Below, piece by piece: positions 30,187 through 52,110 of a stretch of 64,000 nt of DNA. The stretch is taken from positions 62,001 to 126,000 of the IMG/VR virus record IMGVR_UViG_3300019776_000324. One strand, 5' to 3'. The notes under the pieces are model-generated. The model was not told the origin of the DNA. It made no database searches and saw only the letters and a list, made by a program, of their open reading frames with translations. Position numbers and translations under genes: made by a program. Numbering within the stretch: the stretch's first letter is position 1; each line of letters opens with the position of its first letter.

Positions 30187-30230
30187 TCCGAGAAGAAAAG
30201 AATCATCCTACCCTTTGGGATGGGAAGAGC

Positions 30231-30256
30231 AAAAAAGCACCGCAAGGTGCTTTTTT
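30231..30256. terminator. Bidirectional intrinsic terminator after gp23
   Basis: AAAAAAGCACC-GCAA-GGTGCTTTTTT between convergent genes. Confidence 0.9.
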
Positions 30257-30273
30257 GTTGACTACATTTTTGT

Positions 30274-31422
30274 TTAAATTTTATACCAGCTTAGATATTT
30301 GTGTACCTTTTCGGTTACACTTGCCCAATCGTCCATTTTGGGTTGGCGGAACAATCTAGCAGTAGTGTACCAAGGGCTTGAATCGCGATCAAGTAACCAG
30401 CGCCAATCTAATCCATATTGATTTAGCATGACCCAGACTGGACGACCTAATGCGCCAGCTAAGTGCGCTACAGCGGTATCTACACTTAAAACAACATCCA
30501 AGTGATGCAATAATCCAGCAGTGTCTGAAAAATCTTTTATACTGCCAGGATAGGCTTTTACACCTGCAGAAACTAAAGTAGCTTCCTCTTCTGCAGTACA
30601 ATCAGTTTGCAAATTAATCCACTCATAGTCAGGATTGCGTTTGATCAACTTTAACATGGTTTCAAATGGCATGGCCTTGTGCAAGTTAATCCAAGTATCT
30701 CTACGACCAGACCAACAAAATCCTACACGCAATCTTTTTTTAGGACCTAGTGTTTCTTGCCACCGTTTAATTTTTCCAGGATCGGCTTCAATGTAATATT
30801 GTACATGACTAAGGTTATCCAGTGTGCAACCAATGATTCCTGGAATACTCATAATTGGAGTCCAGTAATCAAAAGGTGGTATATTATTACCGTCAATTGA
30901 AATATGTGAAATAGCTTTCAATGATCTAAACAATGGTTCTAGACTAGGGTTAACATTTAAAACTACCCGAGCACCTCTAGAAGTAAGGTCTCCAATGAAT
31001 CGTACAAACTGTATGTTGTCGCCATGCCCTTGTTCAGCAATGACCAAGATAGTTTTATCCTTGAGATCCTCGCCGGACCAGCGCGGCTGTGAAAAATTAG
31101 GTAATGCTCCTGCTAAGTGTTCATAATTCCAGCGAGTTTCGTATTGCCGCCAGCCTAATTCATAATTTCCACTTAACAGATAAGCCACAGCAAGATTGAA
31201 GTTAGCAGTAGCATTGGTTGGGTCAAGTGTAAGAGCTCTTTGCAAAAACGGAATAGCACCTGCTGGCTCGCCGCACTCGCGCAGGACATTACCATAGTTG
31301 TTAAATGCGCCAGGATGCTGGCGGTCTTGAATCATTGCTTGTGCGTAGTAGGCTAGTGCGCCTTCGGGATTGCGATCGGCACGACATTGATTGCCGTGTG
31401 CTATTAATAATTCTGTATCCAT
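30274..31422 (-). CDS. TPR-repeat glycosyltransferase (GT9/heptosyltransferase-like C-terminal domain)
   Basis: N-terminal TPRs; EQGHGDNIQFVRF, DFSDTAGL..LDVVLSVDTAVAHLAGALG.P.W, WRW....SPWY; start at 31422 is 5 nt after TAAATA. Confidence 0.85.
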   Translation of the reverse strand: MDTELLIAHGNQCRADRNPEGALAYYAQAMIQDRQHPGAFNNYGNVLRECGEPAGAIPFLQRALTLDPTNATANFNLAVAYLLSGNYELGWRQYETRWNYEHLAGALPNFSQPRWSGEDLKDKTILVIAEQGHGDNIQFVRFIGDLTSRGARVVLNVNPSLEPLFRSLKAISHISIDGNNIPPFDYWTPIMSIPGIIGCTLDNLSHVQYYIEADPGKIKRWQETLGPKKRLRVGFCWSGRRDTWINLHKAMPFETMLKLIKRNPDYEWINLQTDCTAEEEATLVSAGVKAYPGSIKDFSDTAGLLHHLDVVLSVDTAVAHLAGALGRPVWVMLNQYGLDWRWLLDRDSSPWYTTARLFRQPKMDDWASVTEKVHKYLSWYKI

Positions 31423-31477
31423 GATCATATTTAATTACAAGCTAACCGCCCAAAATATTTGTGTAACCATAAATACT

Positions 31478-31560
31478 TGTCAACGCAATAAGGCGTTTTA
31501 TGCAGGTATTAAACCCCCTGCGTAGCGGCTAAAACCCGCATAGGACTTCTTTAAGGAGAA
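31478..31560 (+). promoter_or_regulatory. Structured late 5' leader with three hairpins
   Basis: After TAAATA (31470-31475): AACGC/GCGTT, TATGCAGG/CCTGCGTA and GCGG-CTAAAAC-CCGC stems, then AAGGAG RBS. Confidence 0.5.
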
Positions 31561-31566
31561 AACAAA

Positions 31567-32418
31567 ATGGGTCGTCCACTTAAAATTCAAAAATATTCTG
31601 CGATGTCTGGTATCTTTTATGATAACAACAATCAAGGAACAACAGCTCAAGCTGTAGCAATCGATCAGGGATATCCTCCGTTTGCAGCTCCAACTTCATT
31701 GGATACACCAACAGTAGTACTACCACAACCAGTAACAACTCCAGTTCCGTTTACTGGCGTAGTTGGCGGCCTTCGTGGCGGTGCTGTAAGCGCAACATAT
31801 CCAGTTGTTGAGTGCCAAGTTAATATCGCTAAACCAGATGGTACTGGCTTTGGTGTACACAACGGCGCAATCATCCGTCAAAAAGGTGCTCGCAAGTTTA
31901 TGGTAGTTGACTATACAAGTATTGCTGACGAAGCAATTATTCTTGGCGCAACTTACATGATTGCTAGTTTAGGTAGTACTAATTGGCAGTTATTTGGTGC
32001 TCCTGCTGGTGCAGCAGTTGGTACAATTTTTACTGCTACAGCCGCTGGCTCTAACTCAGGTAACGGAACTGCTTATGCAGTTGGTACTTGTGTATTAGTT
32101 AATGATGGCAGTCCAACAGTTGGTAATATGAGTGTCACTATGGCAGTTGGTGGTGATAGTACTGCTGTTTATATCAGTAAGTTAACTAACAAGTTCGTAC
32201 AAGACTTCAATGGTGGTGAAACAGGCGGCAACGCTAACACCGGTGATGTTTGGGCCGAGACTGATGTTATTGACAACATTGAGTATGCAGCTAACTTCTT
32301 TACAGACGAAAGCACATTTGCTAAATCAGGCGCTGAAGTTGACACATGGGTTGGCACACAACAACCTGGTAGCAACGGTACTCTTGAATTGGCACAAGTT
32401 GAGAAGTATACTTCTTAA
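31567..32418 (+). CDS. Probable abundant virion structural protein (decoration-type)
   Basis: MGRPLK start, IIRQKGARKFMV and ISKLTNK motifs; own late promoter, strong RBS and terminator. Confidence 0.6.
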   Translation: MGRPLKIQKYSAMSGIFYDNNNQGTTAQAVAIDQGYPPFAAPTSLDTPTVVLPQPVTTPVPFTGVVGGLRGGAVSATYPVVECQVNIAKPDGTGFGVHNGAIIRQKGARKFMVVDYTSIADEAIILGATYMIASLGSTNWQLFGAPAGAAVGTIFTATAAGSNSGNGTAYAVGTCVLVNDGSPTVGNMSVTMAVGGDSTAVYISKLTNKFVQDFNGGETGGNANTGDVWAETDVIDNIEYAANFFTDESTFAKSGAEVDTWVGTQQPGSNGTLELAQVEKYTS

Positions 32419-32436
32419 TCTTAGTTGCACTCAAAC

Positions 32437-32466
32437 AATCCCCACTAAGTACTGTGGGGATTTTTT
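32437..32466 (+). terminator. Intrinsic terminator whose loop contains TAAGTA
   Basis: AATCCCCAC-TAAGTACT-GTGGGGATT followed by a T run. Confidence 0.75.
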
Positions 32467-33054
32467 ATGACTAGAGCATTCGTAATAGGCAACGGAATCA
32501 GCAGACAGGAAGTTGATTTACATCAACTGCGACCGCTTGGCACTATCTACGGATGTAATGCACTTTACAGAGAATTTGTACCTGAGGTGTTAGTGGCCAC
32601 AGATAAACCTATTGCTGCACAAATACAGCACAGTGGTTACCCATTGACAAATAAGTTTTACACCAGAAGACCAGAATCAAATACAGGAGCACTACAACTT
32701 CCGCCTGAATACTTTGGATACAGTTCTGGACCAAATGCCTGCGGTCTAGCAGCCCAGACCGGTCATACACAAATCTATTTGCTAGGATTTGATATGGGAC
32801 CAACTGTAGATCAGCGATTTAACAACATTTATGCTGGAACAGAATTTTACAAAACACCAGATTCAAAACCCACTTACACTGGAAATTGGGTTAAACAAAT
32901 AACAAAAATTACAAAAGATTACCCTAATACAAATTTTATTCGAGTATGCGGACCCACAACTGCCAGGATAGCCGAGCTAGAATCGGTTAAAAACCTGGAA
33001 CATCAAGACTTATCAACCTTCTTAGACCGCATAAATAACAAAAAGGATCTATAG
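32467..33054 (+). CDS. Maf/DUF115-like (sialyltransferase-fold) protein
   Basis: AFVIGNGISR, YGCNALYR..P..LVATD, SSGPNA..LA...GH..IYLLGFD motif series. Confidence 0.6.
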   Translation: MTRAFVIGNGISRQEVDLHQLRPLGTIYGCNALYREFVPEVLVATDKPIAAQIQHSGYPLTNKFYTRRPESNTGALQLPPEYFGYSSGPNACGLAAQTGHTQIYLLGFDMGPTVDQRFNNIYAGTEFYKTPDSKPTYTGNWVKQITKITKDYPNTNFIRVCGPTTARIAELESVKNLEHQDLSTFLDRINNKKDL

Positions 33055-33675
33055 ATGTCTACATACAAGAATACCAGTGGCGATTTAACTCTAACCGGCG
33101 ACAGCGGAAATGCCACCCTTACGATTAACTATGCTAATACTGTGTTTAACGGTAGTTTTACCTATACAGGTAACTTGACCACAGTTGATGATTTTATTGT
33201 TGTGGCAGCTAACAATACTGGCACTGTACAAGACATGGGCTTGCTAGTGGGCATTAATGTTACAACTGATACCTATGCTGGATTTAGATTTGACACAGTA
33301 GCAAACACCTGGCAGGTTAGTTCTAGTGTATATGGCAACGGCGCACCACGAACAGCATACGCTAACATTGGTGGTATAGCACTTGGGTCAAACACACAGG
33401 TGCAATACAACAATAACGGTTCTCTTGCTGGCAGTTCAGGATTTACATTTAATCAAACTTCTAATGCAGTAGCAATAGGCGGAGCACTAACAGTTCGCGG
33501 AGTTGAGGTATTAAGTAATGTTGGGACCGCACCAGTTGCAGTAGCTAATTCAGTATCAATCTATAACAATGCACCTGGAACCGGACAGACAGGTTTGTAT
33601 GTAACTGGCAACACTATTGCCACCGACGAAGTCATTAGTGCGACCCGTGCAAAACTTTACAGTATTATATTTTAA
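33055..33675 (+). CDS. Virion structural protein (fibre/baseplate-associated)
   Basis: T/N/G-rich beta protein; GSNTQVQYNNNG module shared with the fibres. Confidence 0.65.
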   Translation: MSTYKNTSGDLTLTGDSGNATLTINYANTVFNGSFTYTGNLTTVDDFIVVAANNTGTVQDMGLLVGINVTTDTYAGFRFDTVANTWQVSSSVYGNGAPRTAYANIGGIALGSNTQVQYNNNGSLAGSSGFTFNQTSNAVAIGGALTVRGVEVLSNVGTAPVAVANSVSIYNNAPGTGQTGLYVTGNTIATDEVISATRAKLYSIIF

Positions 33676-33684
33676 GGAACAAAT

Positions 33685-33996
33685 ATGGCAATTTCAACAG
33701 TAAGCGTTACAACCGTAGGTAACACCGTTTATACTAGTACTGGCAATACAGCCATTACTTGGCTCAGTCTGAACAACTGGGGCCCATCAAATGTAACAGC
33801 AAATGTTTTTGCAGTGCCTAACGGCAATGCCGCAGGAACAACCAATCAGGTTGCGTATGCGTTGTTATTACAAAGTGGTGATACATATCAAATTTATGTT
33901 GGTAATGAAAAATTACTATTAAGCAACGGCGACTTCATTAAAGTTAACGCCACAGCAAACACTGTCAGCGCAGTGACTTCTTATACTTCGGTGTAA
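33685..33996 (+). CDS. Small virion structural protein
   Basis: 103 aa beta-sandwich-like, EKLLLSNGD motif; AAGGA RBS. Confidence 0.65.
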   Translation: MAISTVSVTTVGNTVYTSTGNTAITWLSLNNWGPSNVTANVFAVPNGNAAGTTNQVAYALLLQSGDTYQIYVGNEKLLLSNGDFIKVNATANTVSAVTSYTSV

Positions 33997-34394
33997 TGGG
34001 TTACTTCTTAAAAAATCGTCAGTTACAGTCTGGCAGTAGTGGTGTGGTCTTGCCCACAGGCGGATCGGCTACTCGACCAGACAATGCAGCCTTTGGTATG
34101 ATTCGATATAATACCGATACTGGTTTCTGTGAATTTTTTAATGGATCGTTGTGGCAAAACATGGGTGTTGGTGGCGCAGTTAATTATGTAGTCGATGACT
34201 TCACCGGAAACGGATCACAAACAGTATTCACAATGAGTATTGCCGAAAGCTCCGCCGAACAAATTATTGTATTTGTAGGATCGATATATCAAATTCCAGT
34301 AATCAATTACACAGTTGATGGCGGATACGATATTACCTTTATGAGCGCACCTCCGATTGGTGTTCCAATCAACGTTATACATACCAGTAACTAA
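33996..34394 (+). CDS. Virion structural protein (fibre adaptor modules)
   Basis: LPTG..A.RP....GMIRYNT and FTGNGSQTVF..V.V..IYQ.P..Y modules. Confidence 0.65.
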   Translation: MGYFLKNRQLQSGSSGVVLPTGGSATRPDNAAFGMIRYNTDTGFCEFFNGSLWQNMGVGGAVNYVVDDFTGNGSQTVFTMSIAESSAEQIIVFVGSIYQIPVINYTVDGGYDITFMSAPPIGVPINVIHTSN

Positions 34395-34416
34395 CCAAGG
34401 TATCTAGGAATAATTT

Positions 34417-35871
34417 ATGGCAATCAGTAAAATAGCAGGGCAAATGCTTCAAAGCACTCTTGCAAGAGATGGCAATAACCTCGCGTTCACTGATACTGCA
34501 AATACAACTCCAACTCTTTATTTAGATATTGCCAATACTCGTGTCGGCATCAACACAAACAATCCCAGTGTAGCATTAGAAGTTATTGGCAATATCAAAG
34601 CTAATAATCTTTTCAGCACAAACACAGCATCAATCACAGGCAATGTGATTGTTGGCAATTTGAGTACTGCTGGCAATGTTACGGCTGCTAACTTTTATGG
34701 CAACATCAGTAACACAGCCAATGTTGTAACTAGTGCTAAAATTTTATATGTGGCAACAAACGGCAATGATTCAAATACTGGATCAATTACTGCACCGTAC
34801 TTGACAATCAAGGCCGCAATGGCCGCTGCCACTGCAGGTACTTCTGTGCATGTTGCTCCCGGCACATATACCGAAGTATGCCCAATTACCATTCCTGCTA
34901 ATGTTTCGTTAATGGGCGACAATCTACGCAATGTTGTTATTCAGCCAACTGTGTCGACTGCAGATATGTTTTATGTCGGTGGCGGCAGCTATGTATGGGG
35001 TATAACAATCAAAGGTTACACTGGTAACGGATTCAGTTATGATCCTAGCACAGTAACTACTGCTTTTGTTAGCCCGTACATTCAAAATTTAACATCCAGC
35101 ACTACAACTGGTACTGCTGTTTATATTGACGGTGATAAGTGTACAGGAACCAAAGCTATGATTGTTGGTTTTTTTACAATCATTAACCAAGGCGGCAAGG
35201 GTATACATCTTTTAAATTCTGCATACAGTCAGTTGGTCAACATTTATACTATTGCTTGTGATATTGGTATTCAAGTTGAGTCCGGCGGATTCTGTACACT
35301 CAACGGTAGTGATTGCTCCATTGGCAATTATGGATTGGTTGCTGATGGCTATGGACCATTACAAACCTCCGGAAACATTATAAGTCAGTCGCAAGGAACA
35401 TTTGTAATTGGTACTTTGACAGGCGGACAACCACATGTTAATACTGTTATGGTTATTGCTGGAGATCCTTCATATTACACCATTGACACAATTTTGCCAA
35501 ATGTTCCAGCTGTTGGTAATAGCACAGTGGTAGTTCAAGAAATTTATACAGGCAACGCTGCACCCGGTACCGGCGTAAGTTTTTACACTCGTAGCAGTAT
35601 TATTGCCAGCGCCCATACATTTGAATATGTTGGAGCAGGAACTAATCCAGCTACAGCACTACCGCAATATGGCGGAATACCAATTGAAGCCAACGAAGTT
35701 GTAGCAACCAACGGTGGTGTCGTAACTTATACTGCTACTGATCAAAAAGGTAATTTTAAAGTGGGCGAACAATTTATTGTTAATCAAGCAACAGCAACCA
35801 TCACTGGTGATGCGTTTTATAAGAGTTTGTTTGCTCAAATGACGCCATACATTTTGGCCCTTAGCACATAA
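34417..35871 (+). CDS. Tail spike/fibre with pectate-lyase-like beta-helix
   Basis: LYVATNGNDSNTG....PYLTIKAA, VAPGTYTE..PITIP..VSLMGDNLR, SPYIQN. Confidence 0.7.
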   Translation: MAISKIAGQMLQSTLARDGNNLAFTDTANTTPTLYLDIANTRVGINTNNPSVALEVIGNIKANNLFSTNTASITGNVIVGNLSTAGNVTAANFYGNISNTANVVTSAKILYVATNGNDSNTGSITAPYLTIKAAMAAATAGTSVHVAPGTYTEVCPITIPANVSLMGDNLRNVVIQPTVSTADMFYVGGGSYVWGITIKGYTGNGFSYDPSTVTTAFVSPYIQNLTSSTTTGTAVYIDGDKCTGTKAMIVGFFTIINQGGKGIHLLNSAYSQLVNIYTIACDIGIQVESGGFCTLNGSDCSIGNYGLVADGYGPLQTSGNIISQSQGTFVIGTLTGGQPHVNTVMVIAGDPSYYTIDTILPNVPAVGNSTVVVQEIYTGNAAPGTGVSFYTRSSIIASAHTFEYVGAGTNPATALPQYGGIPIEANEVVATNGGVVTYTATDQKGNFKVGEQFIVNQATATITGDAFYKSLFAQMTPYILALST

Positions 35872-35898
35872 ACATAAGTAATACACAAGGAAAAAAAC

Positions 35899-36234
35899 AT
35901 GTCAGGCGCATTAAACGTATTTAAAACAGTAACAGCAAATGTAACCACTACTCCTACTAGTGTGTATAGTACTCCTATTGGGTATTCATCAGTTGTACTA
36001 ATGGCGCAGATCAGTAATATTGATGTGGCAAATACTATACAGGTAAGTGGTAGTTTGGTAAGATCCGGCAACACCACAGCATTTGTAAAAAATGCCAGTA
36101 TTCCAACCACTGATGCAATTAGCCTTATTACTGGACGACTGATCATGAACTACGGTGATAGTTTTCAAGTAAGCGCCAGTGCTAATGCCAGCGCACAGTT
36201 AACTTTGAGTTTGTTAGAAACATTGACAGGATAA
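35899..36234 (+). CDS. Small virion structural protein (resembles 33685-33996)
   Basis: LNVFKT.., GRLIMNYGD, LSLLET. Confidence 0.65.
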   Translation: MSGALNVFKTVTANVTTTPTSVYSTPIGYSSVVLMAQISNIDVANTIQVSGSLVRSGNTTAFVKNASIPTTDAISLITGRLIMNYGDSFQVSASANASAQLTLSLLETLTG

Positions 36235-36235
36235 C

Positions 36236-36976: not shown

Positions 36977-37069
36977 TATTACTTGCAGTTTAAGAAACTT
37001 TTGGGTTACGATAAATAAGTCATAGCCCTGGATTACCACGGCTTTAAGACCCATTAACCGGAGAATATA

Positions 37070-43000: not shown

Positions 43001-43261
43001 GTAGCTGGTGTAGTTTCTACCAATCCTGGTTTTGTAATGAATGAAGGATTAGACAGTGAATTTGCTGTAGCTATTGCACTTACAGGTCGTGTACCATGTT
43101 TTGTTATTGGACCAGTACGCAAGGGTGACTTAATGGTTGCGGCAGGACTAGGTCGTGCTAGAGCAGAAGCTAATCCTAAGCCAGGTACAATAATTGGTAA
43201 AGCACTAGAAGATTTTGATGGTGCCGAAGGTACAATAGAAGTGGTAGTTGGACGCTTCTAA
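37070..43261 (+). CDS. Long tail fibre (2063 aa) with 17- and 21-aa repeats and C-terminal intramolecular chaperone (peptidase G2/S74-like)
   Basis: TGGNLATGGTASATGTI and TAASTVGGVITGTSTSVTGTQ repeats; AQYADLAEKY..GVVSTNP..ALTGRVPC..KGDL..IGKALE. Confidence 0.85.
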   Translation: MAVTRINNNQITDASAGNAYVGVNAAVKLQNYTITSQKIANNLNYGSDLTIAGNLTVNGTTTTVDTVNVLVKDPLITLADGQTSGTPTLDIGTIGLRGSQLSAVMAWKESQLEFVTALSNTTVSNTTFNISSYANLHTGNFIVQGTTSLVGNMIGAVNATGTITGGNLATPGTVSSGGNITGGNLLTGGLVSSTGTITGGNLATGGTVSATGNITTAGFFVGTFAGSISGNVTAAGANTQVQYNNSGNLAASSAFTFNSATNVLSLTGNVQGGNLLTGGLVSSTGTITGGNLATGGTASATGTITGGNLATGGTASATGNITGGNLLTGGLISATSNVTSAANISGGNLLTGGLVSSTGTITGGNLATGGTISSTGNITGGNISATNHTGTAVSVTGGVTAASVSGGVITGTSTSVTGTQTAASTVGGVITGTSTSVTGTQTAASTVGGVITGSSTSVSGTQTAASTVGGVITGSSSSVTGNVTGGNVNTAGNISATANITASYYFGNGSQLTGVTASTSGFPVTAGTSNIAAATNGSIGITVAGTSNVLTVASTGTVTTGTASVTGNITGGNISATNHTGTNVSVTGTQTAASTVGGVITGSSVSVTGNITGGNLNSAQVYNATAMTITTSAGNINLSPAGNLVLNSDYINNVLDPVQPQDVATKAYVDNFATTGIAFHTPVVAATTTTLASATGGTITYTQPNGVANGIGALLTTTGSFNLIDTANVQTVGTRILVKNEGNAVFNGIYTWANATNIVRSTDADTYGPDSTTDLSVNDYFFVSSGNVNSGSAYIVNAPTGTITFGTSNITFAQFSQAQTYTANTQAGLSLTGTVFSAKIDNNTTAFDGNGNIIVKAGANLTTPNIGAATGTSLSVTGTVTAASTVGGVITGSSSSVTGNITGGNIATGGTISATGNITSSGNVSAATHIGTAVSVTGGVTASSVAGGVITGTSTSVTGSQTAASTVGGVITGSSVSVSGGVTAASVAGGVITGTSTSVTGSQTAASTVGGVITGSSSSVTGTQTAASTVGGVITGSSSSVSGAVTGGSIATGGTISATGNITGGNVSATTYTGTNVSVTGTVTAASTVGGVITGTSASVSGGVTAASVAGGVITGTSTSVSGTQTAASTVGGVITGSSVSVSGGVTAASVAGGVITGTSSSVSGAVTGGSLATGGTISGTGNITGGNILTGGLISAAGNIIANPSSFFIGNGSQLTGVAASSAGFPVSAGTTNISAATNGNIGFTIGGTSNVVTMATTGEYVTGVVSASGNITGGNVLTGGLISATGNINGGNVQGGNIVLTGNSINEAAAGGTITINGNNSNTNFAVNGDVGSNVFFVNATTETASFGNATQTTNAVVAFNATNSIKLPVGNIGQRPATGVTGMVRFNTTNNNLEVYDNSQWSAVGVPSFTIIADQQFNGDGTTVAFTLNSTQTTNSCIVSINGIVQIPTIAYSVAGTNPTCVLTFTEAPSAGDIIDVRELTTTTTVTSISNASGNAVVAVSDTAPLVNVTGDLSVTGTILGGNINSTAITNGTSNVSVASSGGNVRFNIGGTSNVMVVGTGNLVTINGDLTVTGNATLSGNILGDRIQNGTTSFDIQTPSGNANITIGATSNTAVFSTTALTLATNLLPAANITYDLGSTTQRWKDLWLSNSTIYMGNAQISANATSLIFTNPQGGQTVLAGATASITGASVSVTGNVTGGNVNTGGIVSSTGNIYMGSAANLQIGMFNSNIHFQHNTASGNITLLTNFGGAGVVEVFKVLGQGTQGIFANGTASVSGNITGGNVNTTSVSASGTVTAASTVGGVITGSSVSVSGGITGSGITGSSVAGGVITGSSTSVTGTTTAASVVGGVITGSSVSVSGGVTAVSVVGGVITGSSTSVSGTTTAANFTTAGVLTVNSGAAATAIVNGATTGVGNIGSSTTTFNTVFAKATTAQYADLAEKYTADASYVPGTVLVFGGNQEVTVNAVDSDHRVAGVVSTNPGFVMNEGLDSEFAVAIALTGRVPCFVIGPVRKGDLMVAAGLGRARAEANPKPGTIIGKALEDFDGAEGTIEVVVGRF
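37530..40640 (+). repeat. 51-bp and 63-bp coding tandem repeat arrays in the long fibre (two blocks with a non-repetitive spacer)
   Basis: A 53-nt stretch at 38294-38346 repeats exactly 63 nt downstream; 51-nt units at about 37927 and 37978. Confidence 0.85.
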
Positions 43262-43274
43262 ACAGGAAACTGTT

Positions 43275-43306
43275 AAAATAGGACTCTTTATGGGTCCTAT
43301 TTTTTT
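43275..43306 (+). terminator. Intrinsic terminator after the long fibre gene
   Basis: AAAATAGGACTC-TTTAT-GGGTCCTATTTTTTT; new TAAATA at 43310. Confidence 0.85.
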
Positions 43307-43336
43307 GACTAAATATGTGATATTATTGGATAAACA

Positions 43337-46300
43337 ATGGCACTAACCAGACCTCGCGCTGCGCAAATTTACGATATAGATTACAAACAGGCTACGCGAG
43401 TAGTTACGATTTCCAACATCACTTTAGCAGGCAGTGCCCCTAGTAGTGTCGACGGGGTGAGTTTAAGTCTTAACGATCGTATTTTGGTAACAGGGCAAAG
43501 CACAGCCAGTCAAAACGGTATCTATTATGTGACCACAGTCGGAACAGGATCAAACGGAACCTGGGCTCGCAGTCAAGATACAAACTCCACAGGAGAATTG
43601 TTAGGCGGTACAATTGTCATGGTTACTGAGGGTACAGTGTATGCTGATACTCAATGGAAATTAACCACAAACGATCCAATTACAATTGGATCAACTGCAT
43701 TAACATTTGTACAAAACTATTCAGCAAATTCGATTAGTGCTGGCACAAGCAATGTTTCAGTAACATCAAATGCTAATGTAACAATCAGTTCGGCTGGCAC
43801 ACCAAATGTGTTAACTGTTAGTTCAACTGGCGTAGTGGTATCTGGAACTGCTAGTGCTACAGGTAACATTACTGGAAATTATTTCTTTGGAAATGGTAGT
43901 CAGTTAACTGGAATAGCACCAAGCTCAACCTACAGTAACTCAAATGTAAGTGCATTTTTAGCAACCTTTGGTAGCAACACAATATCTACCACTGGAACTG
44001 TAACCGCAGGCAATATAACTGGCGGCAATCTACTAACAAGTGGGTTGATTAGTGCCACGGGTAATATCAGCACAGCTGCTCAATTAGTATCAACTGTAGC
44101 CACAGGTACAGCACCCTTTGTTATCAGTTCGACTACTAAAGTTTCTGGATTAAATGTAGAACAGGTTGACGGATTTGATGCTAGCCAATCAGCAGTTGCC
44201 AACACCATAGTGGTACGAGATGCTGGTGGTAATATCAACACCGCTGTATTATCAGCAAGTGGTAATGTCACCGGCGGCAATATTGTAGCTACCACAGCAT
44301 TGACCAATGGCAACATTACAATTACAGGTGCTAACATTGTTAGTACAGGTACAACAATATACATTGATCCAAACGGTACAGGCGGCACAGATGGTAATGT
44401 AATTATTACAGGTAACCTAAGTGTCACCGGCAATGCAACCTATATCAACAGTAACAACATTACCACAAATGACTTGACCATTAACATGGCCAACAACGCG
44501 GCCACTGCCGCTGCTGCCAACGGTGGCGGTATTGAAGTTGGACCAGTGGGTGCACCATATGTTACTTTAACCTACAACAGCACATCTAATATTTGGGTAG
44601 CAAGCAACGGGTTGAATGTACAAGGAATTTTAAGTGCTAGTGGTAACATTACCGGTGGCAATATTTCGGCAACAAATCATACAGGCACCAATGTAAGTGT
44701 CACTGGTACAGTAACAGCTGCAAGTACAGTAGGTGGCGTAATTACTGGCTCAAGTTCTAGTGTTACTGGCACACAGACAGCTGCCTCAACTGTAGGTGGT
44801 GTAATTACTGGCACATCTACATCAGTAAGTGGCGCAGTAACGGCTGGCAGTATAGCCACAAGCGGAACAATTAGTACCACTGGTAATATATACACCGGTA
44901 ATATTTTAACTAACGGCTACTATTATGCCAATGGTGTAGCATTCACAGGCAGTGGTGGCGGCGGTGGCACCCCCGGTGGCGCAAATACCTACATTCAATT
45001 TAATGATGGCGGAGCATTTAACGGCACCGCCGGACTAACTTTTGACAAGACTACAAATGCCGTAGTAGCAACCGGTAATGTTACTGGCGGAAATATCATT
45101 GCTTCAAACGATGTATATGCTGGTCCTGGTGCAACTACAGCAGGATTTACTACAGCTCCGGTATTTGTAGGTCGAGACACTGCTGGAACTTATGTACAAT
45201 CTGCTCTTCAAAATGCGTCTGGTAACGGATCTGCAGACTTTACAGCCTATGCCAACAACGGTACAGAGGCAGCGGGATGGGTTGACATAGGATTTACTGG
45301 AAACACATTCAACGATGGCAACTATACAGTAACTGGTGCCAATGACGGATATTTAATTTCTCAAGGTAATGCCAGCTTTGGCGGTAACTTGGTTATTGCT
45401 ACAGGCGCTATTGGTACTACTAAAGATATTGTATTTGCTACTGGCGGATTCTTAACAGGAAATATCAAAGCCAGATTGTTCAATTCAACTGGTCAATTCA
45501 GTGTGACCGGTAACATCAATGGCGGCAACCTTACAACCACAGGAAAATTACTAGCGGGCACAGCAAATATTACCCCAGCCTCTCAAGGATTTGGTACAGG
45601 TCTTAATGTAACCAGTGGAGATATTACTGTTTTCCGTGGGGATGCCTCTGGCGCCATTTATGTTGGAAATTCTCAAGCTACTTACATATATTATGATGGC
45701 ACAAGTTGGAGTATAGCAGGCGGCACGGGTGTAGCTGTTAGCAATTTAACCACTACTGGAACTGTGAGTGCCACTGGTAACATCACTGGTGGTAACTTAA
45801 GAACCGCTGGACAAGTAAGTGCTACCGGTAACATTACTAGTGCTGCTAATATAGCAGGCGCCAATGCCAACATCACTACACAAATTAATACCACCAGCGT
45901 AAGCGCCAGTGGTAATATTAGAACTGCTGGAACTATTAGTGCTACTTCTTCAGTTACTGCTGCCTCAACAGTAGGTGGCGTAATTACCGGCTCAAGTGTA
46001 AGTGTCACTGGTGCACAGACAGCTGCTTCAACAGTTGGTGGAGTAATTACCGGCTCAAGTGTAAGTGTCACTGGTGCACAGACAGCTGCTTCAACAGTTG
46101 GTGGAGTAATTACTGGAACAAGTGTATCAGTTAGTGGGTCAGTTACTGGAGGAGCACACAACGGTACCAGTGTATCAGTAAGTGGTGGTGTAACTGCCGC
46201 TAGTGTTAGTGGTGGAGTAATTACCGGAACAAGTGTATCAGTCAGTGGTAACGTAACAGCTGGCGGGCATGTTGGAACTGTTTACACCAACAGTATTATT

Positions 46301-46771
46301 AACACTGGTGCCAACGCAACAGGTAATATTGGTAGCGCAACACTATATTTTAATACGGCATTTATCAAAGCAACATCAGCACAGTACGCTGACTTGGCCG
46401 AGATGTATACCGCTGATGATAACTATGTTCCGGGTACTGTAGTTGAGTTTGGTGGCGATCAAGAAGTTACAATTAGTAGTTCAAATCATTGCACACAAGT
46501 AGCTGGTATTATTTCAACTAATCCAAGTTACTTGATGAACAGCGCACAAGAAGGTGAACATGTGTTGCCAGTTGCGCTAACTGGTCGAGTTCCTTGTCAA
46601 GTAGTTGGAACTATACGCAAAGGTGATCGATTAGTGTCAAGCGATTTACCTGGTGTTGCTATGGCATTAGATATGAAACACTACGAGCCGGGCTGTATCA
46701 TTGGCAAAGCATTGGAAAATTACAATTCTATTGCCACTGGAGTAATTGAAGTAGCAGTCGGACGATTCTAA
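43337..46771 (+). CDS. Second tail fibre (1144 aa), same repeat family, with C-terminal chaperone
   Basis: DGVSLSLNDRILVTGQS.A.QNGIY head domain; 21-aa repeats; AQYADLAEMY..ALTGRVPC..KGD..IGKALE. Confidence 0.85.
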   Translation: MALTRPRAAQIYDIDYKQATRVVTISNITLAGSAPSSVDGVSLSLNDRILVTGQSTASQNGIYYVTTVGTGSNGTWARSQDTNSTGELLGGTIVMVTEGTVYADTQWKLTTNDPITIGSTALTFVQNYSANSISAGTSNVSVTSNANVTISSAGTPNVLTVSSTGVVVSGTASATGNITGNYFFGNGSQLTGIAPSSTYSNSNVSAFLATFGSNTISTTGTVTAGNITGGNLLTSGLISATGNISTAAQLVSTVATGTAPFVISSTTKVSGLNVEQVDGFDASQSAVANTIVVRDAGGNINTAVLSASGNVTGGNIVATTALTNGNITITGANIVSTGTTIYIDPNGTGGTDGNVIITGNLSVTGNATYINSNNITTNDLTINMANNAATAAAANGGGIEVGPVGAPYVTLTYNSTSNIWVASNGLNVQGILSASGNITGGNISATNHTGTNVSVTGTVTAASTVGGVITGSSSSVTGTQTAASTVGGVITGTSTSVSGAVTAGSIATSGTISTTGNIYTGNILTNGYYYANGVAFTGSGGGGGTPGGANTYIQFNDGGAFNGTAGLTFDKTTNAVVATGNVTGGNIIASNDVYAGPGATTAGFTTAPVFVGRDTAGTYVQSALQNASGNGSADFTAYANNGTEAAGWVDIGFTGNTFNDGNYTVTGANDGYLISQGNASFGGNLVIATGAIGTTKDIVFATGGFLTGNIKARLFNSTGQFSVTGNINGGNLTTTGKLLAGTANITPASQGFGTGLNVTSGDITVFRGDASGAIYVGNSQATYIYYDGTSWSIAGGTGVAVSNLTTTGTVSATGNITGGNLRTAGQVSATGNITSAANIAGANANITTQINTTSVSASGNIRTAGTISATSSVTAASTVGGVITGSSVSVTGAQTAASTVGGVITGSSVSVTGAQTAASTVGGVITGTSVSVSGSVTGGAHNGTSVSVSGGVTAASVSGGVITGTSVSVSGNVTAGGHVGTVYTNSIINTGANATGNIGSATLYFNTAFIKATSAQYADLAEMYTADDNYVPGTVVEFGGDQEVTISSSNHCTQVAGIISTNPSYLMNSAQEGEHVLPVALTGRVPCQVVGTIRKGDRLVSSDLPGVAMALDMKHYEPGCIIGKALENYNSIATGVIEVAVGRF

Positions 46772-47433
46772 TGCAAGCGAGGTATAGATCAGACTATCCA
46801 GGAGAATTTGTTGTACTCGAAAGTCGTTGGGCCGGCAACAAAAAAGAAGAAACCAGAGAATGGGTAGCCAATCCAATTGAGAATCAACATATCTCAGGCC
46901 GCGCTGCATGTATAGCCAGCAACAACAATCGAGAACGATTTGATTACACTATACTGCAAAGACATCGCGGCGGCCTACTTGGAAGTAAAAAATTACAAAC
47001 CTACGGAACAGGCACAATTGCAGGTGACATGCGTTTAGATTTTACTGTGGAAACTGATACTGCAAGACTAGCACAACTAAAAGAATCTAAATATTCTGAA
47101 AATAACATTGTATATACAACGCCAAGGAATTGTATTGCCAATCCAGGAGAATTTTATCTAATACCTCAAAATCCCAGAGTACTTGATGTTTCTCAAATTA
47201 TCTATTTGGCTGCATTTGATGGCCACCAAGAAATATTCATGCTAGGATACAACAACGAAACTCCAGTAGACCACCCAACTTGGCAAGATCAGATCAGGAT
47301 GATTATGGATGCATATCCAGGAGTATTATTTTATTTTGTAGGCGAACCAACAAATATGTTTGATGTTTGGTTAGACGCCGATAATGCTAGAACTTTGACC
47401 TATAGAGATTTTATAGGTTATTGTGATGTCTAA
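46771..47433 (+). CDS. Hypothetical protein, divergent Maf/DUF115-like
   Basis: YLAAFDGHQEIFMLGY parallels LAAQTGHTQIYLLGFD of 32467-33054; W..QI..I...YP...F..V also shared. Confidence 0.5.
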   Translation: MQARYRSDYPGEFVVLESRWAGNKKEETREWVANPIENQHISGRAACIASNNNRERFDYTILQRHRGGLLGSKKLQTYGTGTIAGDMRLDFTVETDTARLAQLKESKYSENNIVYTTPRNCIANPGEFYLIPQNPRVLDVSQIIYLAAFDGHQEIFMLGYNNETPVDHPTWQDQIRMIMDAYPGVLFYFVGEPTNMFDVWLDADNARTLTYRDFIGYCDV

Positions 47434-47868
47434 TTAGCCAGCAACTAACTTTTCAATAGTTTGAATTTTATCTCGAACAGCATCAAAATTTACAGTACTC
47501 CATAAACCCGGATGCATTGGCCTTGGCCAAACACCAGTATTGATCCATGCCCAACCGTTGTGTTCTTCATTTAATTTGGGAACGAACTCTGTAGCTACAC
47601 TGCAAAAGAATGTGTGATATTCAAACCCAGAGTCAGATGTGGTAAATTTTTCCAAGGGTACCAGTTTTAAATAATCGGGCATATATCCTAATTCTTCAGA
47701 ACACTCGCGTTGTATGCCGTCAATTAAGGTTTCGCCAGACTCAATTTTACCACCAGGCAATCCCCAGCAGTTTGGATTCTTTGGATCATTGCGCATGAGA
47801 TAAAGATATCGTTGCGTATCTATACTATAGAACCAAACACCAACAGCAGTTATAATACTAGACTCCAT
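47434..47868 (-). CDS. NUDIX hydrolase
   Basis: Nudix box GGKIESGETLIDGIQRECSEELG; LNEEH..WAW. Confidence 0.92.
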   Translation of the reverse strand: MESSIITAVGVWFYSIDTQRYLYLMRNDPKNPNCWGLPGGKIESGETLIDGIQRECSEELGYMPDYLKLVPLEKFTTSDSGFEYHTFFCSVATEFVPKLNEEHNGWAWINTGVWPRPMHPGLWSTVNFDAVRDKIQTIEKLVAG

Positions 47869-52099: not shown

Positions 52100-52110
52100 C
52101 TAAGTAGTTG

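What the first reader, a model, noticed from the sequence alone, without database searches (positions are those of the whole stretch)
30274..47868. Fibre gene cluster bracketed by glycosyltransferase-like genes: candidate virion glycosylation system
Seen: a TPR-GT9-like gene under a late promoter (30274-31422). Two mutually similar Maf/DUF115-like genes sit immediately before (32467) and after (46771) a block of extremely Ser/Thr/Asn-rich fibre genes, and a NUDIX gene follows. An SGNH-like gene lies at 54348. Known: Maf proteins O-glycosylate flagellin Ser/Thr with nonulosonic acids, and TPR-GT fusions typically act on protein substrates. Inference: the phage glycosylates its fibres or capsid, or remodels the host surface for superinfection exclusion.
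Basis: inference. Interest (0 to 1): 0.6.

Follow-up and report, generated by a model that had tools for sequence, protein, structure and literature searches.

The report
Glycosyltransferase-like genes around jumbo-phage fibres
A 344-kb freshwater jumbo phage carries two probable sugar-transferring enzymes and one degenerate copy among its head and fibre genes, so a sugar coat on the virion is plausible but unproven, and the three genes are not one fixed system.

Summary
The genes exist, but several details of the finding are wrong. The TPR-GT9-like gene (30274-31428) lies on the minus strand. The late-promoter-like motif beside it (ATAAATA, 31469) faces the other way and drives a 283-aa gene (p283) and gene A.

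- **Gene A (32467-33054):** a minimal GT42/Maf-fold protein. Its family profile hits only CstII/Cst-I-type sialyltransferases in the PDB (E 2e-8). The model's best structural match is Maf (Z 13.3). The four donor-nucleotide motifs are invariant, but no conserved histidine takes the place of CstII His188.
- **Gene B (46771-47433):** a true but distant paralogue of A (hhalign 96.9%) that has replaced all four motifs. Its start overlaps the stop of the last fibre gene.
- **Fibre genes:** repetitive, 34-38% Ser/Thr/Asn. One carries a capsid-decoration-like N-terminus.

Comparative data split the "system". A follows p283 and the head genes; in distant relatives it sits between portal and protease. 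B travels with the fibre block and NUDIX. TPR-GT9 is an optional insert. A 93%-complete relative has A alone.

The genome lacks NeuB and CMP-sugar synthetase genes but encodes other nucleotide-sugar enzymes. Virion glycosylation is my preferred reading (about 0.4). Host-envelope remodelling is a serious rival.

The parts
30274..31428 (-). TPR-GT9-like protein (384 aa): three TPR hairpins (about residues 5-103), then a two-Rossmann GT-B-like part. It carries a GT9-type 'GHGD' stretch (134-137) and 'VDTAVAHLAGALGRP' (316-330).
   Evidence: Pfam TPR families E 6e-11. PF01075 scores 21.4 bits against a cut-off of 22, at residues 300-331. Most of more than 7700 homologues carry PF01075. Atlas feature score 0.97 to GT9 clusters. 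AF2 model pLDDT 75; Foldseek hits SPY, OGT, XcOGT and WaaF 1psw. Motif residues are invariant in 29 homologues.
31454..31483 (-). Sigma-70-like promoter candidate for the TPR-GT9 gene (TTGACA-18-AATATT).
   Evidence: Consensus scan, 10 of 12 matches. A similar site occurs in 16 of 33 distinct homologous intergenic regions. Its TTGACA is the reverse complement of sequence adjoining the late motif, so it may be coincidental.
31469..31475 (+). Late-promoter-like motif ATAAATA, 98 nt upstream of the 283-aa gene.
   Evidence: In the window, 9 sites, 8 of them within 100 nt upstream of a same-strand gene start. Genome-wide, 33 of 46 sites lie within 100 nt upstream of a same-strand ORF start, against 7-33% for eight composition-matched heptamers.
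31567..32418 (+). p283: a 283-aa Thr/Gly/Ala-rich protein of unknown family. I take it to be an abundant virion (capsid-surface?) protein.
   Evidence: No Pfam, PHROG or NCBIfam hit. It has the late motif upstream, an AAGGAGA ribosome-binding site and a hairpin plus T-run directly downstream. It sits directly upstream of A in 49 of 51 close-clade loci.
32437..32462 (+). Terminator-like hairpin (9 bp stem, 5 GC pairs) followed by TTTT, ending 4 nt before gene A's ATG.
32467..33054 (+). Gene A: a minimal (195 aa) GT42/Maf-fold protein and probable nucleotide-sugar transferase.
   Evidence: AF2 model pLDDT 82. Foldseek top hits are sialyltransferases 9c08, CstII and Cst-I, and Maf 5mu5. VIA Z 13.3 to Maf, 10.9 to CstII, 9.8 to MptE. 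Family profile against the PDB hits only GT42 chains, E 2e-8 to 3.5e-7. Motifs align to CstII residues 2-36 and 130-155. Invariant across the family: N9 G10 R13 N31 G88 G107 D109.
33055..36976 (+). Six small to medium fibre-like genes (206, 103, 132, 484, 111 and 246 aa). A late motif lies at 33031, inside the 3' end of A.
   Evidence: Ser+Thr+Asn 24-38%. The 484-aa protein matches tail-fibre PHROGs (E 5.5e-72) and Pfam DUF1565; the others match fibre-associated PHROGs. Late motif.
37070..43261 (+). F2063: a 2063-aa repetitive fibre protein with GNITGGN and SVTGxQTAASTVGGVITG repeats. A late motif lies at 37011.
   Evidence: Ser+Thr+Asn 38%, Gly 16%. Repeats seen. The C-terminal domain matches phrog_22593 and a tail-fibre PHROG.
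43337..46771 (+). F1144: a 1144-aa repetitive fibre protein with a capsid-decoration-like N-terminal domain. It may be a head fibre.
   Evidence: The N-terminal 150 aa hit the solved 'capsid decoration protein' 9nx3_A (E 3.3e-6) and phrog_2647 'head decoration' (E 5e-26). Same repeats and C-terminal domain as F2063.
46771..47433 (+). Gene B: a 220-aa divergent paralogue of A with all four donor-nucleotide motifs replaced. Its start overlaps the stop of F1144 (ATGA).
   Evidence: hhalign against A: probability 96.9%. No family or PDB hit of its own. Nearest Pfam-bearing Atlas cluster is MptE-like at 0.88, a lead only. Mean column identity is 75% over 28 homologues. Start and stop overlap in 54 of 78 related loci.
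47434..47868 (-). NUDIX hydrolase (144 aa), the last gene of the convergent tail operon (451-aa virion protein, 471-aa sheath-associated protein, NUDIX).
   Evidence: Pfam NUDIX E 1.3e-15; PHROG MutT/NUDIX E 1e-22. It lies immediately downstream of B in 80 of 80 related loci.

Best explanation
The window is the head, fibre and tail module of a 344-kb freshwater jumbo myophage with direct terminal repeats.

Inside the late structural gene block sits gene A, a minimal GT42/Maf-fold enzyme. It keeps the donor-nucleotide pocket of CMP-sugar sialyltransferases. A is read from the late promoter of the abundant 283-aa protein p283, probably at a low level through a terminator-like hairpin.

I propose that A transfers an acidic sugar of the Kdo/nonulosonate type, or another nucleotide-activated sugar supplied by the host or by the phage's own sugar genes. 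The acceptor would be a virion surface protein made at the same time: p283 and/or the Ser/Thr/Asn-rich fibres, or a glycan already on them.

The TPR-GT9-like protein is a second, optional transferase. It has the architecture of protein-directed glycosyltransferases: a TPR acceptor-binding arm plus a GT-B catalytic part with the GT9 signature. It is transcribed divergently and not from the late motif. It may prime the same proteins or may act on a host target.

B is a degenerate paralogue of A. It can no longer bind the donor in the same way, and it is translationally coupled to the last fibre gene. I take it for a fibre-associated non-catalytic or re-purposed protein.

Shown here: the folds, the motifs, the paralogy, the strands, the promoter motif and the synteny. 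Inferred: the donor, the acceptor and any glycosylation at all.
For: - **Lineage.** The major capsid protein is 65% identical to those of jumbo phages such as Vibrio phage 2.275.O and PA5oct. The genome is 344,244 bp with terminal repeats.
- **Gene A identity.** Family profile against the PDB gives only GT42 sialyltransferases (E 2e-8, next hit E>1). Fold Z 13.3 to Maf and 10.9 to CstII, with a gap to unrelated folds at Z 7. The GNGxS, CN, SG and GxD motifs align with CstII 2-36 and 130-155 and are invariant across 49 sequences of 30-55% identity.
- **TPR-GT9 identity.**
- **Late co-expression.** Genome-wide, 33 of 46 ATAAATA sites lie within 100 nt upstream of same-strand ORF starts. Sites at 31469, 33031 and 37011 precede p283, the first fibre gene and F2063.
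- **Conserved adjacency.** p283-A in 49 of 51 close loci. In 38 of 48 of those loci the next gene downstream is a + strand gene with at least 27% Ser+Thr+Asn. In distant relatives A lies inside the head module.
- **Capsid link.** F1144 carries a capsid-decoration-like anchor.
- **Sugar supply.** The phage encodes GalE, an RmlB-like dehydratase, a PseC/WecE-like aminotransferase, a sugar C-methyltransferase and GT1/GT2-like genes elsewhere.
- **Precedents.** The TPR arm of FlmG binds its flagellin substrate (PMC7591256). Maf-1 uses a TPR domain and Maf-2 needs a separate specificity factor (bioRxiv 10.1101/2023.12.03.569772). A Maf enzyme accepts CMP-Kdo (PMC11339370). Mycobacteriophage virions are glycosylated (Freeman et al. 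2023, as cited in PMC12619734).
Against: - There are no protein-chemistry data.
- No conserved histidine corresponds to the CstII catalytic His188.
- A has no acceptor-binding domain. Its closest characterised relatives (CstI, CstII) act on lipooligosaccharide glycans, not on proteins.
- GT9 enzymes are classically LPS-core heptosyltransferases.
- The phage has no NeuB and no CMP-sugar synthetase gene.
- TPR-GT9 is on the opposite strand without the late motif. It is absent from 3 of 27 close loci and all 14 more distant loci.
- A relative that is 93% complete has A but neither B nor TPR-GT9.
- In Pelagibacter phage HTVC008M the three A-family genes sit among replication, carbamoyltransferase and dioxygenase genes, not by fibres.
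- The excess of Asn-x-Ser/Thr sites in the fibres (z 2.4-3.7) comes from the GNITGGN repeat itself.
Confidence: 0.4

Rival explanations
1. Host-envelope remodelling. The TPR-GT9-like enzyme and A act on the host's LPS or LOS core, capsule or a surface protein. This would block superinfection, or stop progeny from sticking to debris of lysed cells. The virion itself stays unmodified.
For: - The characterised members of both families work on LPS or LOS: GT9 on inner-core heptose, GT42 CstI/II on LOS sialylation. These are the only significant PDB sequence hits of A, and WaaF is among the TPR-GT9 fold hits.
- TPR-GT9 is divergently transcribed, has a sigma-70-like promoter candidate and no late motif, and behaves as an optional insert.
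- Aquatic phages with many GT and sugar-nucleotide genes are usually read this way (PMC12801897).
- A has no acceptor-protein domain.
Against: - A and B are embedded in late structural operons. In distant relatives A lies between portal and prohead protease, an odd place for a host-surface enzyme.
- The TPR arm suggests a protein partner.
- Neither enzyme has a membrane anchor noted in the models, although LPS-core enzymes are also peripheral proteins.
Confidence: 0.27
2. A and B are not glycosyltransferases in this phage. The shared fold also houses pyrophosphokinases (MptE HPPK, thiamin pyrophosphokinase). A could phosphorylate or pyrophosphorylate a small molecule or a protein. B could be a fibre assembly or attachment factor that only keeps the scaffold.
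For: - MptE HPPK scores Z 9.8 and thiamin pyrophosphokinase Z 8.1 against the A model.
- Pfam MptE-like is the only (weak) Pfam hit of A, and 9 of 49 family members hit it, as many as hit CST-I.
- No CstII-type catalytic histidine is present.
- B lacks all donor motifs, yet it is more conserved than A (75% against 68% mean column identity) and is translationally coupled to the last fibre gene, the classical place of a fibre chaperone.
- The genome has GTP cyclohydrolase I, the first pterin-pathway enzyme.
Against: - Significant sequence hits in the PDB are to GT42 sialyltransferases only, not to MptE.
- Maf and CstII align over 165-172 residues, against 131 for MptE.
- B stays conserved while the upstream fibre gene varies widely (222-1701 aa, or unrelated proteins in 17 loci), which does not fit a fibre-specific chaperone.
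Confidence: 0.18
3. A is a head-packaged enzyme that is delivered into the cell with the DNA and acts on a host target at the start of infection, in the manner of T4 Alt.
For: - In the most distant clade A lies between portal and prohead protease.
- There it carries a conserved 46-58-aa basic, helical N-terminal extension that the window's copy lacks.
Against: - No targeting signal or protease site was tested.
- In this window A has no extension and lies after the capsid gene.
- Packaged glycosyltransferases have, to my knowledge, not been described.
Confidence: 0.07

Closest known systems
GT42 sialyltransferases CstII and Cst-I of Campylobacter jejuni, and the Pasteurella multocida LOS sialyltransferase (PDB 1ro7, 2p2v, 9c08)
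   Same: They are the only significant sequence matches of the A family in the PDB (E 2e-8). The single-domain Rossmann-type fold is the same (Z 10-11 over about 170 residues). The N-terminal G-N-G-x-S, C-N, S-G and G-x-D donor-nucleotide motifs fall at equivalent positions.
   Different: A is about 65 residues shorter. It has no conserved histidine at or near CstII His188. It is encoded in a phage late structural operon rather than an LOS locus. The known enzymes sialylate glycolipid glycans. No CMP-sialic-acid pathway is present in the phage.
Maf flagellin nonulosonic-acid transferases (Magnetospirillum Maf, PDB 5mu5; Shewanella Maf-1 and Maf-2/GlfM)
   Same: Maf is the best structural match of A (Z 13.3, rmsd 3.0 over 165 residues). 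Maf enzymes O-glycosylate Ser/Thr of a polymerising surface protein in the cytoplasm. Some need a TPR domain or a separate specificity factor (bioRxiv 10.1101/2023.12.03.569772), which recalls the separate TPR protein and the paralogue B.
   Different: Maf proteins are about three times longer, with flanking acceptor-binding domains. A scores below the Pfam threshold for MptE-like/DUF115 (14.3 bits against 34.6). There is no flagellin and no nonulosonate genes.
TPR plus GT-B protein glycosyltransferases (OGT/GT41, SPINDLY, Xanthomonas OGT, Caulobacter FlmG)
   Same: The order of domains is the same: an N-terminal TPR superhelix, then a two-Rossmann GT-B part. These are the top Foldseek matches of the whole model (E 3e-9 to 1e-6). 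The TPR domain of FlmG binds the substrate protein (PMC7591256).
   Different: There are only three TPR hairpins. The catalytic part carries the GT9 signature, not GT41. Overall TM-scores are low (about 0.3) because the domains are oriented differently.
GT9 heptosyltransferases (WaaC, WaaF) and the autotransporter heptosyltransferases TibC/AAH
   Same: The Pfam GT9 match covers the C-terminal nucleotide-binding signature. WaaF (1psw) is among the fold hits. A weak phage homologue is annotated 'tibC'. From my own knowledge, TibC/AAH put heptose on Ser of repetitive beta-helical adhesins, a substrate type much like these fibres.
   Different: The score is just below the Pfam cut-off for this protein. 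No TPR arm is known in WaaC, WaaF or TibC. The donor is untested. No direct similarity to TibC itself was shown here.
Mycobacteriophage virion glycosylation (Freeman et al. 2023, as cited in PMC12619734)
   Same: Phage-encoded glycosyltransferase genes lie next to capsid and tail genes, with capsid and tail-tube subunits as substrates.
   Different: The enzyme families, the hosts (Actinobacteria) and the small siphoviruses are all different. There the modification was demonstrated by mass spectrometry; here nothing has been measured.

Membership tests
GT42 (CAZy; Pfam CST-I PF06002) | Significant sequence similarity to characterised GT42 enzymes | tested here: met
   The profile of 49 A-family sequences against all PDB chains finds nine GT42 sequences at E 2.2e-8 to 3.5e-7, and nothing else below E 1. 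The window protein alone gives only E 0.7. Pfam CST-I is hit by 9 of 49 family members, best E 8.6e-5, but not by the window protein.
GT42 (CAZy; Pfam CST-I PF06002) | Single Rossmann-type sialyltransferase fold with a lid region | tested here: met
   AF2 model pLDDT 82. CstII Z 10.9 (172 residues, rmsd 3.9) and Cst-I Z 10.8. The low-confidence segment 112-127 lies where the CstII lid lies.
GT42 (CAZy; Pfam CST-I PF06002) | Donor (CMP) binding motifs: G-N-G-x-S, C-N, S-G, G-x-D | tested here: met
   HMMER aligns A 2-36 with CstII 2-36 and A 85-110 with CstII 130-155. N9, G10, N31, G88, G107 and D109 are invariant and G8, S12 and C30 nearly so in 49 sequences. That these positions contact CMP in CstII is from my knowledge of the 1RO7 structure, not tested here.
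GT42 (CAZy; Pfam CST-I PF06002) | Catalytic general base His188 (CstII numbering) | tested here: not met
   No histidine is invariant or nearly invariant anywhere in the A family. In the profile alignment His188 falls on a variable position near T138. The alignment is uncertain in the lid.
GT42 (CAZy; Pfam CST-I PF06002) | CMP-nonulosonate donor available | tested here: inconclusive
   The 344-kb genome has no NeuB (PF03102) and no CMP-sugar synthetase (PF02348). The host is unknown, so host supply (including CMP-Kdo) cannot be judged.
Maf / DUF115 (Pfam MptE-like PF01973) | Pfam family score above the gathering threshold | tested here: not met
   A scores 14.3 bits against a cut-off of 34.6 (E 0.036). 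B has no hit.
Maf / DUF115 (Pfam MptE-like PF01973) | Fold of the central catalytic domain | tested here: met
   Maf 5mu5 is the best VIA match: Z 13.3, rmsd 3.0, 165 residues, chain residues 272-513.
Maf / DUF115 (Pfam MptE-like PF01973) | Flanking N- and C-terminal acceptor (flagellin) binding domains and a flagellar or nonulosonate gene context | tested here: not met
   A has 195 aa and matches only the central third of the 632-residue Maf chain. Its neighbours are capsid and fibre genes.
GT9 (Pfam Glyco_transf_9 PF01075) | Pfam family score above the gathering threshold | tested here: inconclusive
   The window protein scores 21.4 bits against a cut-off of 22.0. Most close homologues carry PF01075 in precomputed annotation. 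26 of 30 nearest Atlas clusters are GT9, score 0.97.
GT9 (Pfam Glyco_transf_9 PF01075) | GT-B fold with two Rossmann halves and the C-terminal D-x-x-x-x-H-L-A-x-A-L-G-x-P signature | tested here: met
   The model shows two beta/alpha/beta halves (126-195 and 234-361). Foldseek hits GT-B enzymes including WaaF 1psw (E 2.7e-6). D317, T318, A319, H322, L323, G325, L327, G328, R329 and P330, and also G136 and D137, are invariant in 29 homologues. The Pfam match covers residues 300-331.
GT9 (Pfam Glyco_transf_9 PF01075) | ADP-heptose as donor and LPS core as acceptor | not testable with these tools
   This needs enzyme assays.
TPR-GT protein glycosyltransferases (GT41 OGT/SPY; FlmG type) | N-terminal TPR array fused to a C-terminal GT-B domain | tested here: met
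   TPR Pfam hits at residues 18-98. TPR matches at Z 17 over residues 1-104. SPY aligns over 293 residues and XcOGT over 312.
TPR-GT protein glycosyltransferases (GT41 OGT/SPY; FlmG type) | Sequence membership of GT41 | tested here: not met
   No GT41 family appears among the Pfam or NCBIfam hits. PDB sequence hits to OGT and SPY are confined to the TPR part (query residues 18-101).
NUDIX hydrolases | Pfam NUDIX domain | tested here: met
   PF00293 at 58 bits against a cut-off of 21.1. The substrate is unknown; the best NCBIfam hits are weak and MutT- or NudI-like.
SGNH/GDSL hydrolases (gene at 54348-55094) | Family match with the catalytic blocks | tested here: not met
   Only DUF6071 at E 0.0024, below its cut-off. 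No PHROG or NCBIfam hit. The sequence has 'YSNSCSFG' and 'LDGHPG' instead of the GDS and DxxH blocks.

The most novel reading that the evidence does not exclude
A very abundant lineage of freshwater jumbo phages coats its capsid surface protein and its hair-like head and tail fibres with sugars drawn from the host's LPS-precursor pool (CMP-Kdo-type and ADP-heptose-type donors) or from the phage's own deoxy-amino-sugar genes. It would do this with a stripped-down GT42/Maf-type enzyme that has been part of the head gene module since before these clades split. A catalytically dead paralogue (B) would act as an adaptor on the fibres. That would be the first Maf/GT42-type protein glycosylation system in a virus.
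Probability: 0.15. Interest if true: 0.75.

Novelty: new variant of a known kind. Interest (0 to 1): 0.45.

Why it matters
Virion glycosylation has been shown experimentally only for a few phages (mycobacteriophages) and for giant eukaryotic viruses. If a GT42/Maf-type enzyme decorates capsid or fibre proteins in this lineage, a bacterial flagellin/LOS chemistry would extend to phage particles. The lineage is abundant: more than 1300 clusters at 50% identity for gene A alone.

Such a coat would bear on adsorption, grazing resistance and particle stability in fresh water. It would also supply a very small (195 aa) transferase for glyco-engineering.

Even without that, the pairing of an intact enzyme with a motif-less paralogue at the two borders of a hypervariable fibre cassette is a clean system for studying how pseudo-enzymes arise in viruses.

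Tried and rejected
- **DNA search.** Megablast of 30000-37000 against 50,697 phage records found nothing.
- **tblastn of A, B and TPR-GT9 against cultured phages.**
  - A is found only in Pelagibacter phages HTVC008M and Mosig.
  - B is found nowhere.
  - TPR-GT9 gives only weak hits.
- **PDB searches that failed.** The narrow A profile (A1) found nothing useful; only the wider profile A4 worked. The C-terminal part of TPR-GT9 alone, as a single sequence, found nothing. The full-length profile was swamped by TPR hits, and so was the VIA re-alignment.
- **Possible third paralogue.** A gene at genome 199271-199822 has hmmsearch E 1.3e-3 but hhalign probability only 44%. I do not count it.
- **N-glycosylation sequons.** Asn-x-Ser/Thr sites are enriched in the big fibres (z 2.4-3.7), but this is explained by the GNITGGN repeat, so I do not use it as evidence.
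- **T4 late promoter.** The exact TATAAATA occurs once in the window, and not near these genes.
- **Moraphage paper.** PMC12619734 describes a different lineage (genomes up to 307 kb, Bacteroidota hosts), so it is not applicable.
- **Vibrio phage 2.275.O.** Its 236-aa gene between portal and protease is not an A homologue, and its genome has none.
- **Complex prediction.** No result exists.
- **Sequencing runs.** Only one freshwater metagenome holds 6% of the sampled words, and there are no RNA runs.
- **Cellular genomes.**
  - The narrow one found only a same-lineage phage contig binned in a Haliscomenobacter MAG and a weak archaeal hit.
  - Cellular contexts of the family therefore remain unexplored.

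Full report
**What the window is.** The window is bases 62001-126000 of a single 344,244-bp viral contig with direct terminal repeats. Its major capsid protein (28990-30186) belongs to the T4 gp23 type. It is 65% identical to the capsid proteins of jumbo myophages such as Vibrio phage 2.275.O, PA5oct and Serratia phage BF.
- Upstream lie portal, prohead protease and scaffold-like genes. Downstream, on the minus strand, lie sheath-associated and virion genes, and further on an 1104-aa tail sheath.
- The only public run holding part of the region is a freshwater metagenome.
- A contig of the same lineage has been binned with a Haliscomenobacter MAG. That is at most a weak host lead.

**Check of the observation.** Three points need correction.
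- The TPR-GT9-like ORF (30274-31428) is on the minus strand.
- The promoter-like element next to it belongs to the opposite strand.
- The 'SGNH-like' gene at 54348 has no supported family assignment.

The fibre block is real. Eight + strand genes lie between 33055 and 46771 with 24-38% Ser+Thr+Asn. Two are giants of 2063 and 1144 aa, built of GNITGGN and SVTGxQTAASTVGGVITG repeats with a shared C-terminal domain. The N-terminal 150 residues of the 1144-aa protein match a solved capsid decoration protein (9nx3_A, E 3.3e-6) and a 'head decoration' PHROG (E 5e-26). At least this 'fibre' may therefore be anchored on the head rather than the tail.

**The TPR-GT9-like protein.**
- Residues 1-104 are a three-hairpin TPR array (Pfam E 6e-11; Z 17 to TPR structures).
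- The rest folds into two Rossmann-like halves.
- Pfam GT9 scores 21.4 bits against a cut-off of 22.0, on residues 300-331. These hold the signature VDTAVAHLAGALGRP, invariant in 29 homologues, as is a GHGD stretch in the first half.
- Most of more than 7700 environmental homologues carry PF01075. The language-model search places the catalytic part among GT9 clusters (0.97).
- As a whole the model matches TPR plus GT-B protein glycosyltransferases (SPINDLY, OGT, Xanthomonas OGT; E 3e-9 to 1e-6) and WaaF (E 2.7e-6).
- My reading: a GT9-signature transferase with the architecture of a protein-directed enzyme.

**Gene A.**
- Alone it gives only hints: MptE-like E 0.036, a PHROG called 'alpha-2,3-sialyltransferase' at E 1.8e-6, and CstII at E 0.7.
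- The family is large. It has 1937 clusters at 90% identity and 1317 clusters at 50% identity with E up to 1e-3. I ran the large search because the family scans had left the protein open.
- A profile of 49 members (30-55% identical to A) hits nine GT42 sialyltransferase sequences in the PDB at E 2e-8 to 3.5e-7, and nothing else below E 1.
- The AlphaFold model (pLDDT 82) is closest to Maf (Z 13.3, 165 residues, rmsd 3.0), then CstII and Cst-I (Z 10-11), then the archaeal pyrophosphokinase MptE (Z 9.8). Unrelated Rossmann folds start at Z 7.
- HMMER aligns A 2-36 with CstII 2-36 and A 85-110 with CstII 130-155.
- The aligned G-N-G-x-S, C-N, S-G and G-x-D positions are the invariant columns of the whole family, together with R13, D46, N120, Y122, T125, Y128 and N176.
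- No histidine is conserved, so the CstII base His188 has no counterpart.
- My reading: A is a minimal member of the GT42/Maf fold group with an intact donor-nucleotide pocket and an unknown catalytic base.

**Gene B.**
- B is homologous to A (hhalign 96.9%, E 1.7e-10; reciprocal hmmsearch E 1.7e-6).
- At the four motif positions it reads RAACI(G/A)S, YG(V/T)G, a proline-rich loop and LGYN.
- It has a 44-residue N-terminal extension and invariant residues of its own. It is more conserved than A.
- It has no family or PDB hit. Its nearest Pfam-bearing Atlas cluster is MptE-like at 0.88, which is only a lead.

**Transcription signals.**
- The heptamer ATAAATA is rare in the genome (46 sites). 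Of these, 33 lie within 100 nt upstream of a same-strand ORF start, against 7-33% for eight composition-matched heptamers and about 11% expected by position.
- In the window it precedes the 685-aa gene, p283, the first fibre gene, F2063, the sheath and others. I read it as the late promoter core, akin to T4's TATAAATA. That comparison is my own knowledge.
- The site at 31469 faces p283, which has a strong ribosome-binding site. A hairpin plus T-run follows p283 and ends four bases before A's ATG. p283 should therefore be abundant, and A should be made at a lower level by read-through.
- B's ATG overlaps the stop of F1144.
- TPR-GT9 has no such motif on its strand. It has a sigma-70-like candidate (10 of 12), whose -35 hexamer is the reverse complement of sequence adjoining the late motif, so its meaning is open.

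**Comparative anatomy.** I labelled the neighbours of A in 80 IMG/VR loci and of B in 80 others.
- *Close clade* (A at least 52% identical; 51 loci): the order is capsid gene, TPR-GT9 (minus strand), p283, A, fibres.
  - p283 is directly upstream of A in 49 of 51 loci.
  - TPR-GT9 is present in 24 of the 27 loci that cover the interval.
- *A 45-52% identical*: the order is capsid gene, a small or p283-like protein, A, then the same small fibre genes. TPR-GT9 is present in 0 of 7.
- *A below 45% identical*: A often lies between portal and prohead protease (8 loci). It often carries a basic 46-58-residue N-terminal extension. TPR-GT9 is never present (0 of 7).
- *B*: it always precedes the convergent NUDIX gene (80 of 80) and follows a + strand gene.
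  - That gene is F1144-like in 59 of 78 loci, and its stop overlaps B's start in 54.
  - It otherwise varies from 222 to 1701 aa, or is unrelated to F1144.
- One locus (L051) has p283, A and then NUDIX, with neither the fibre block nor B.
- A 93%-complete 330-kb relative has A but neither B nor TPR-GT9.
- Vibrio phage 2.275.O has none of the three genes.
- Pelagibacter phage HTVC008M has three A-family genes. One lies between uvsY and uvsW; two lie beside a carbamoyltransferase and dioxygenase genes.

So A, B and TPR-GT9 have separate histories. A and B mark the conserved borders of a hypervariable fibre cassette rather than forming an operon-like system.

**Sugar supply.** The genome has no NeuB and no CMP-sugar synthetase. 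Elsewhere it has:
- a GalE scoring above the NCBIfam cut-off;
- an RmlB-like 4,6-dehydratase and a further SDR;
- a PseC/WecE-like aminotransferase;
- an NDP-hexose C-methyltransferase-type protein;
- GT1-like and GT2-like genes.

The phage thus invests in unusual nucleotide sugars, but 60-200 kb away from this locus. Their acceptor could equally be host envelope or DNA.

**Most likely mechanism and rivals.**
- *Preferred, about 0.4.* A, made with the structural proteins, glycosylates a virion surface protein (p283, or the fibres) or extends a glycan on it. TPR-GT9, where present, is a second, protein-directed transferase. B is a donor-blind paralogue attached to the fibre operon.
- *Main rival, about 0.27.* The target is the host envelope. 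The characterised relatives of both enzymes act on LPS or LOS, and TPR-GT9 looks like an optional, separately transcribed insert.
- *Third reading, about 0.18.* A is a pyrophosphokinase-like enzyme and B a fibre factor.
- *Fourth reading, about 0.07.* A is packaged in the head and injected.

None of these can be settled without biochemistry. NUDIX is constantly next to B, but that is explained by its position at the end of the convergent tail operon, so I draw no functional link from it.

**Relation to what is known, and novelty.**
- Phage genes annotated as sialyltransferase-like exist in PHROGs.
- TPR-GT fusions are known in bacteria (PMC7591256).
- Virion glycosylation is known in mycobacteriophages (as cited in PMC12619734).
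- What I consider new:
  - a GT42/Maf-fold gene rooted in the head module of an abundant jumbo-phage lineage;
  - its motif-less paralogue at the other border of the fibre cassette;
  - the GT9-signature enzyme with a TPR arm.
- I therefore file the locus as a new variant of a known kind, of moderate interest, with the functional claim still open.

**Housekeeping.**
- No genetic code other than table 11 was used.
- No step needed referral.

Noticed in passing
window 22107, 26038, 31469, 33031, 37011, 56116, 59506, 62711 (+) and 3388 (-); whole genome: The heptamer ATAAATA behaves as a late-promoter core. Genome-wide, 33 of 46 sites lie within 100 nt upstream of a same-strand ORF start, and the motif is several-fold rarer than composition-matched heptamers.
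   Followed up: partly
window 43337-43786 (N-terminus of the 1144-aa fibre protein): It matches a solved 'capsid decoration protein' (9nx3_A, E 3.3e-6) and a head-decoration PHROG. The long repetitive protein may therefore be a head fibre, not a tail fibre.
   Followed up: partly
L077-L090 (IMG/VR loci), e.g. L079:7863-8588: In the most distant clade the gene A homologue lies between portal and prohead protease. It carries a conserved 46-58-residue basic N-terminal extension (KIDKSxYTK...RR.AKK), which may be a head-targeting or scaffold-binding segment.
   Followed up: partly
genome 20-24 kb and 298-310 kb (L009:7109-9122; L008:5394-8223 and 14310-16567): Nucleotide-sugar genes lie far from the finding: GalE (above the NCBIfam cut-off), an RmlB-like dehydratase, another SDR, a PseC/WecE-like aminotransferase (plus a short DegT-like fragment), a sugar C-methyltransferase-type protein and a GT1-like protein. 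A GT2-like gene lies at genome 140520-141257.
   Followed up: partly
L008:8294-9091 (genome about 301.3-302.1 kb) and window 52108-52992: There is a GTP cyclohydrolase I gene, and in the window a radical-SAM protein with weak viperin, MoaA and QueE-like matches. They may belong to a nucleotide or 7-deazaguanine-type modification pathway. I did not pursue this.
   Followed up: no
L010:3271-3822 (genome 199271-199822): A 183-aa ORF shows weak similarity to the N-terminal 70 residues of the A family (hmmsearch E 1.3e-3, hhalign probability 44%). It lacks the GNG motif, so it is a doubtful third paralogue.
   Followed up: partly
KC465899.1 (Pelagibacter phage HTVC008M) 752-1309, 4180-4983, 77489-78319: There are three A-family genes in one 147-kb pelagimyophage. 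Two have an insertion of about 90 residues. Two flank a putative carbamoyltransferase and phytanoyl-CoA-dioxygenase-domain genes. All are annotated as hypothetical.
   Followed up: partly
window 53830-54351, 55091-55756, 56149-59463: These genes encode an Rv2179c-like 3'-5' exoribonuclease (E 3e-33), a dNMP kinase-like protein, and an unusually long (1104 aa) tail sheath.
   Followed up: no
L178 (NZ_JBBAKG010000003.1, 148-kb contig of a Haliscomenobacter MAG): This is a contig of the same phage lineage (capsid protein 91% identical, same gene order including TPR-GT9, p283 and A) filed inside a bacterial MAG. It is either a binning artefact or a hint at a Saprospiraceae host.
   Followed up: partly
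L051 (IMGVR_UViG_3300027749_001410): In this relative p283 and A are followed almost directly by the NUDIX and tail operon. The whole fibre cassette and B are missing. It is either a natural deletion variant or an assembly artefact.
   Followed up: no
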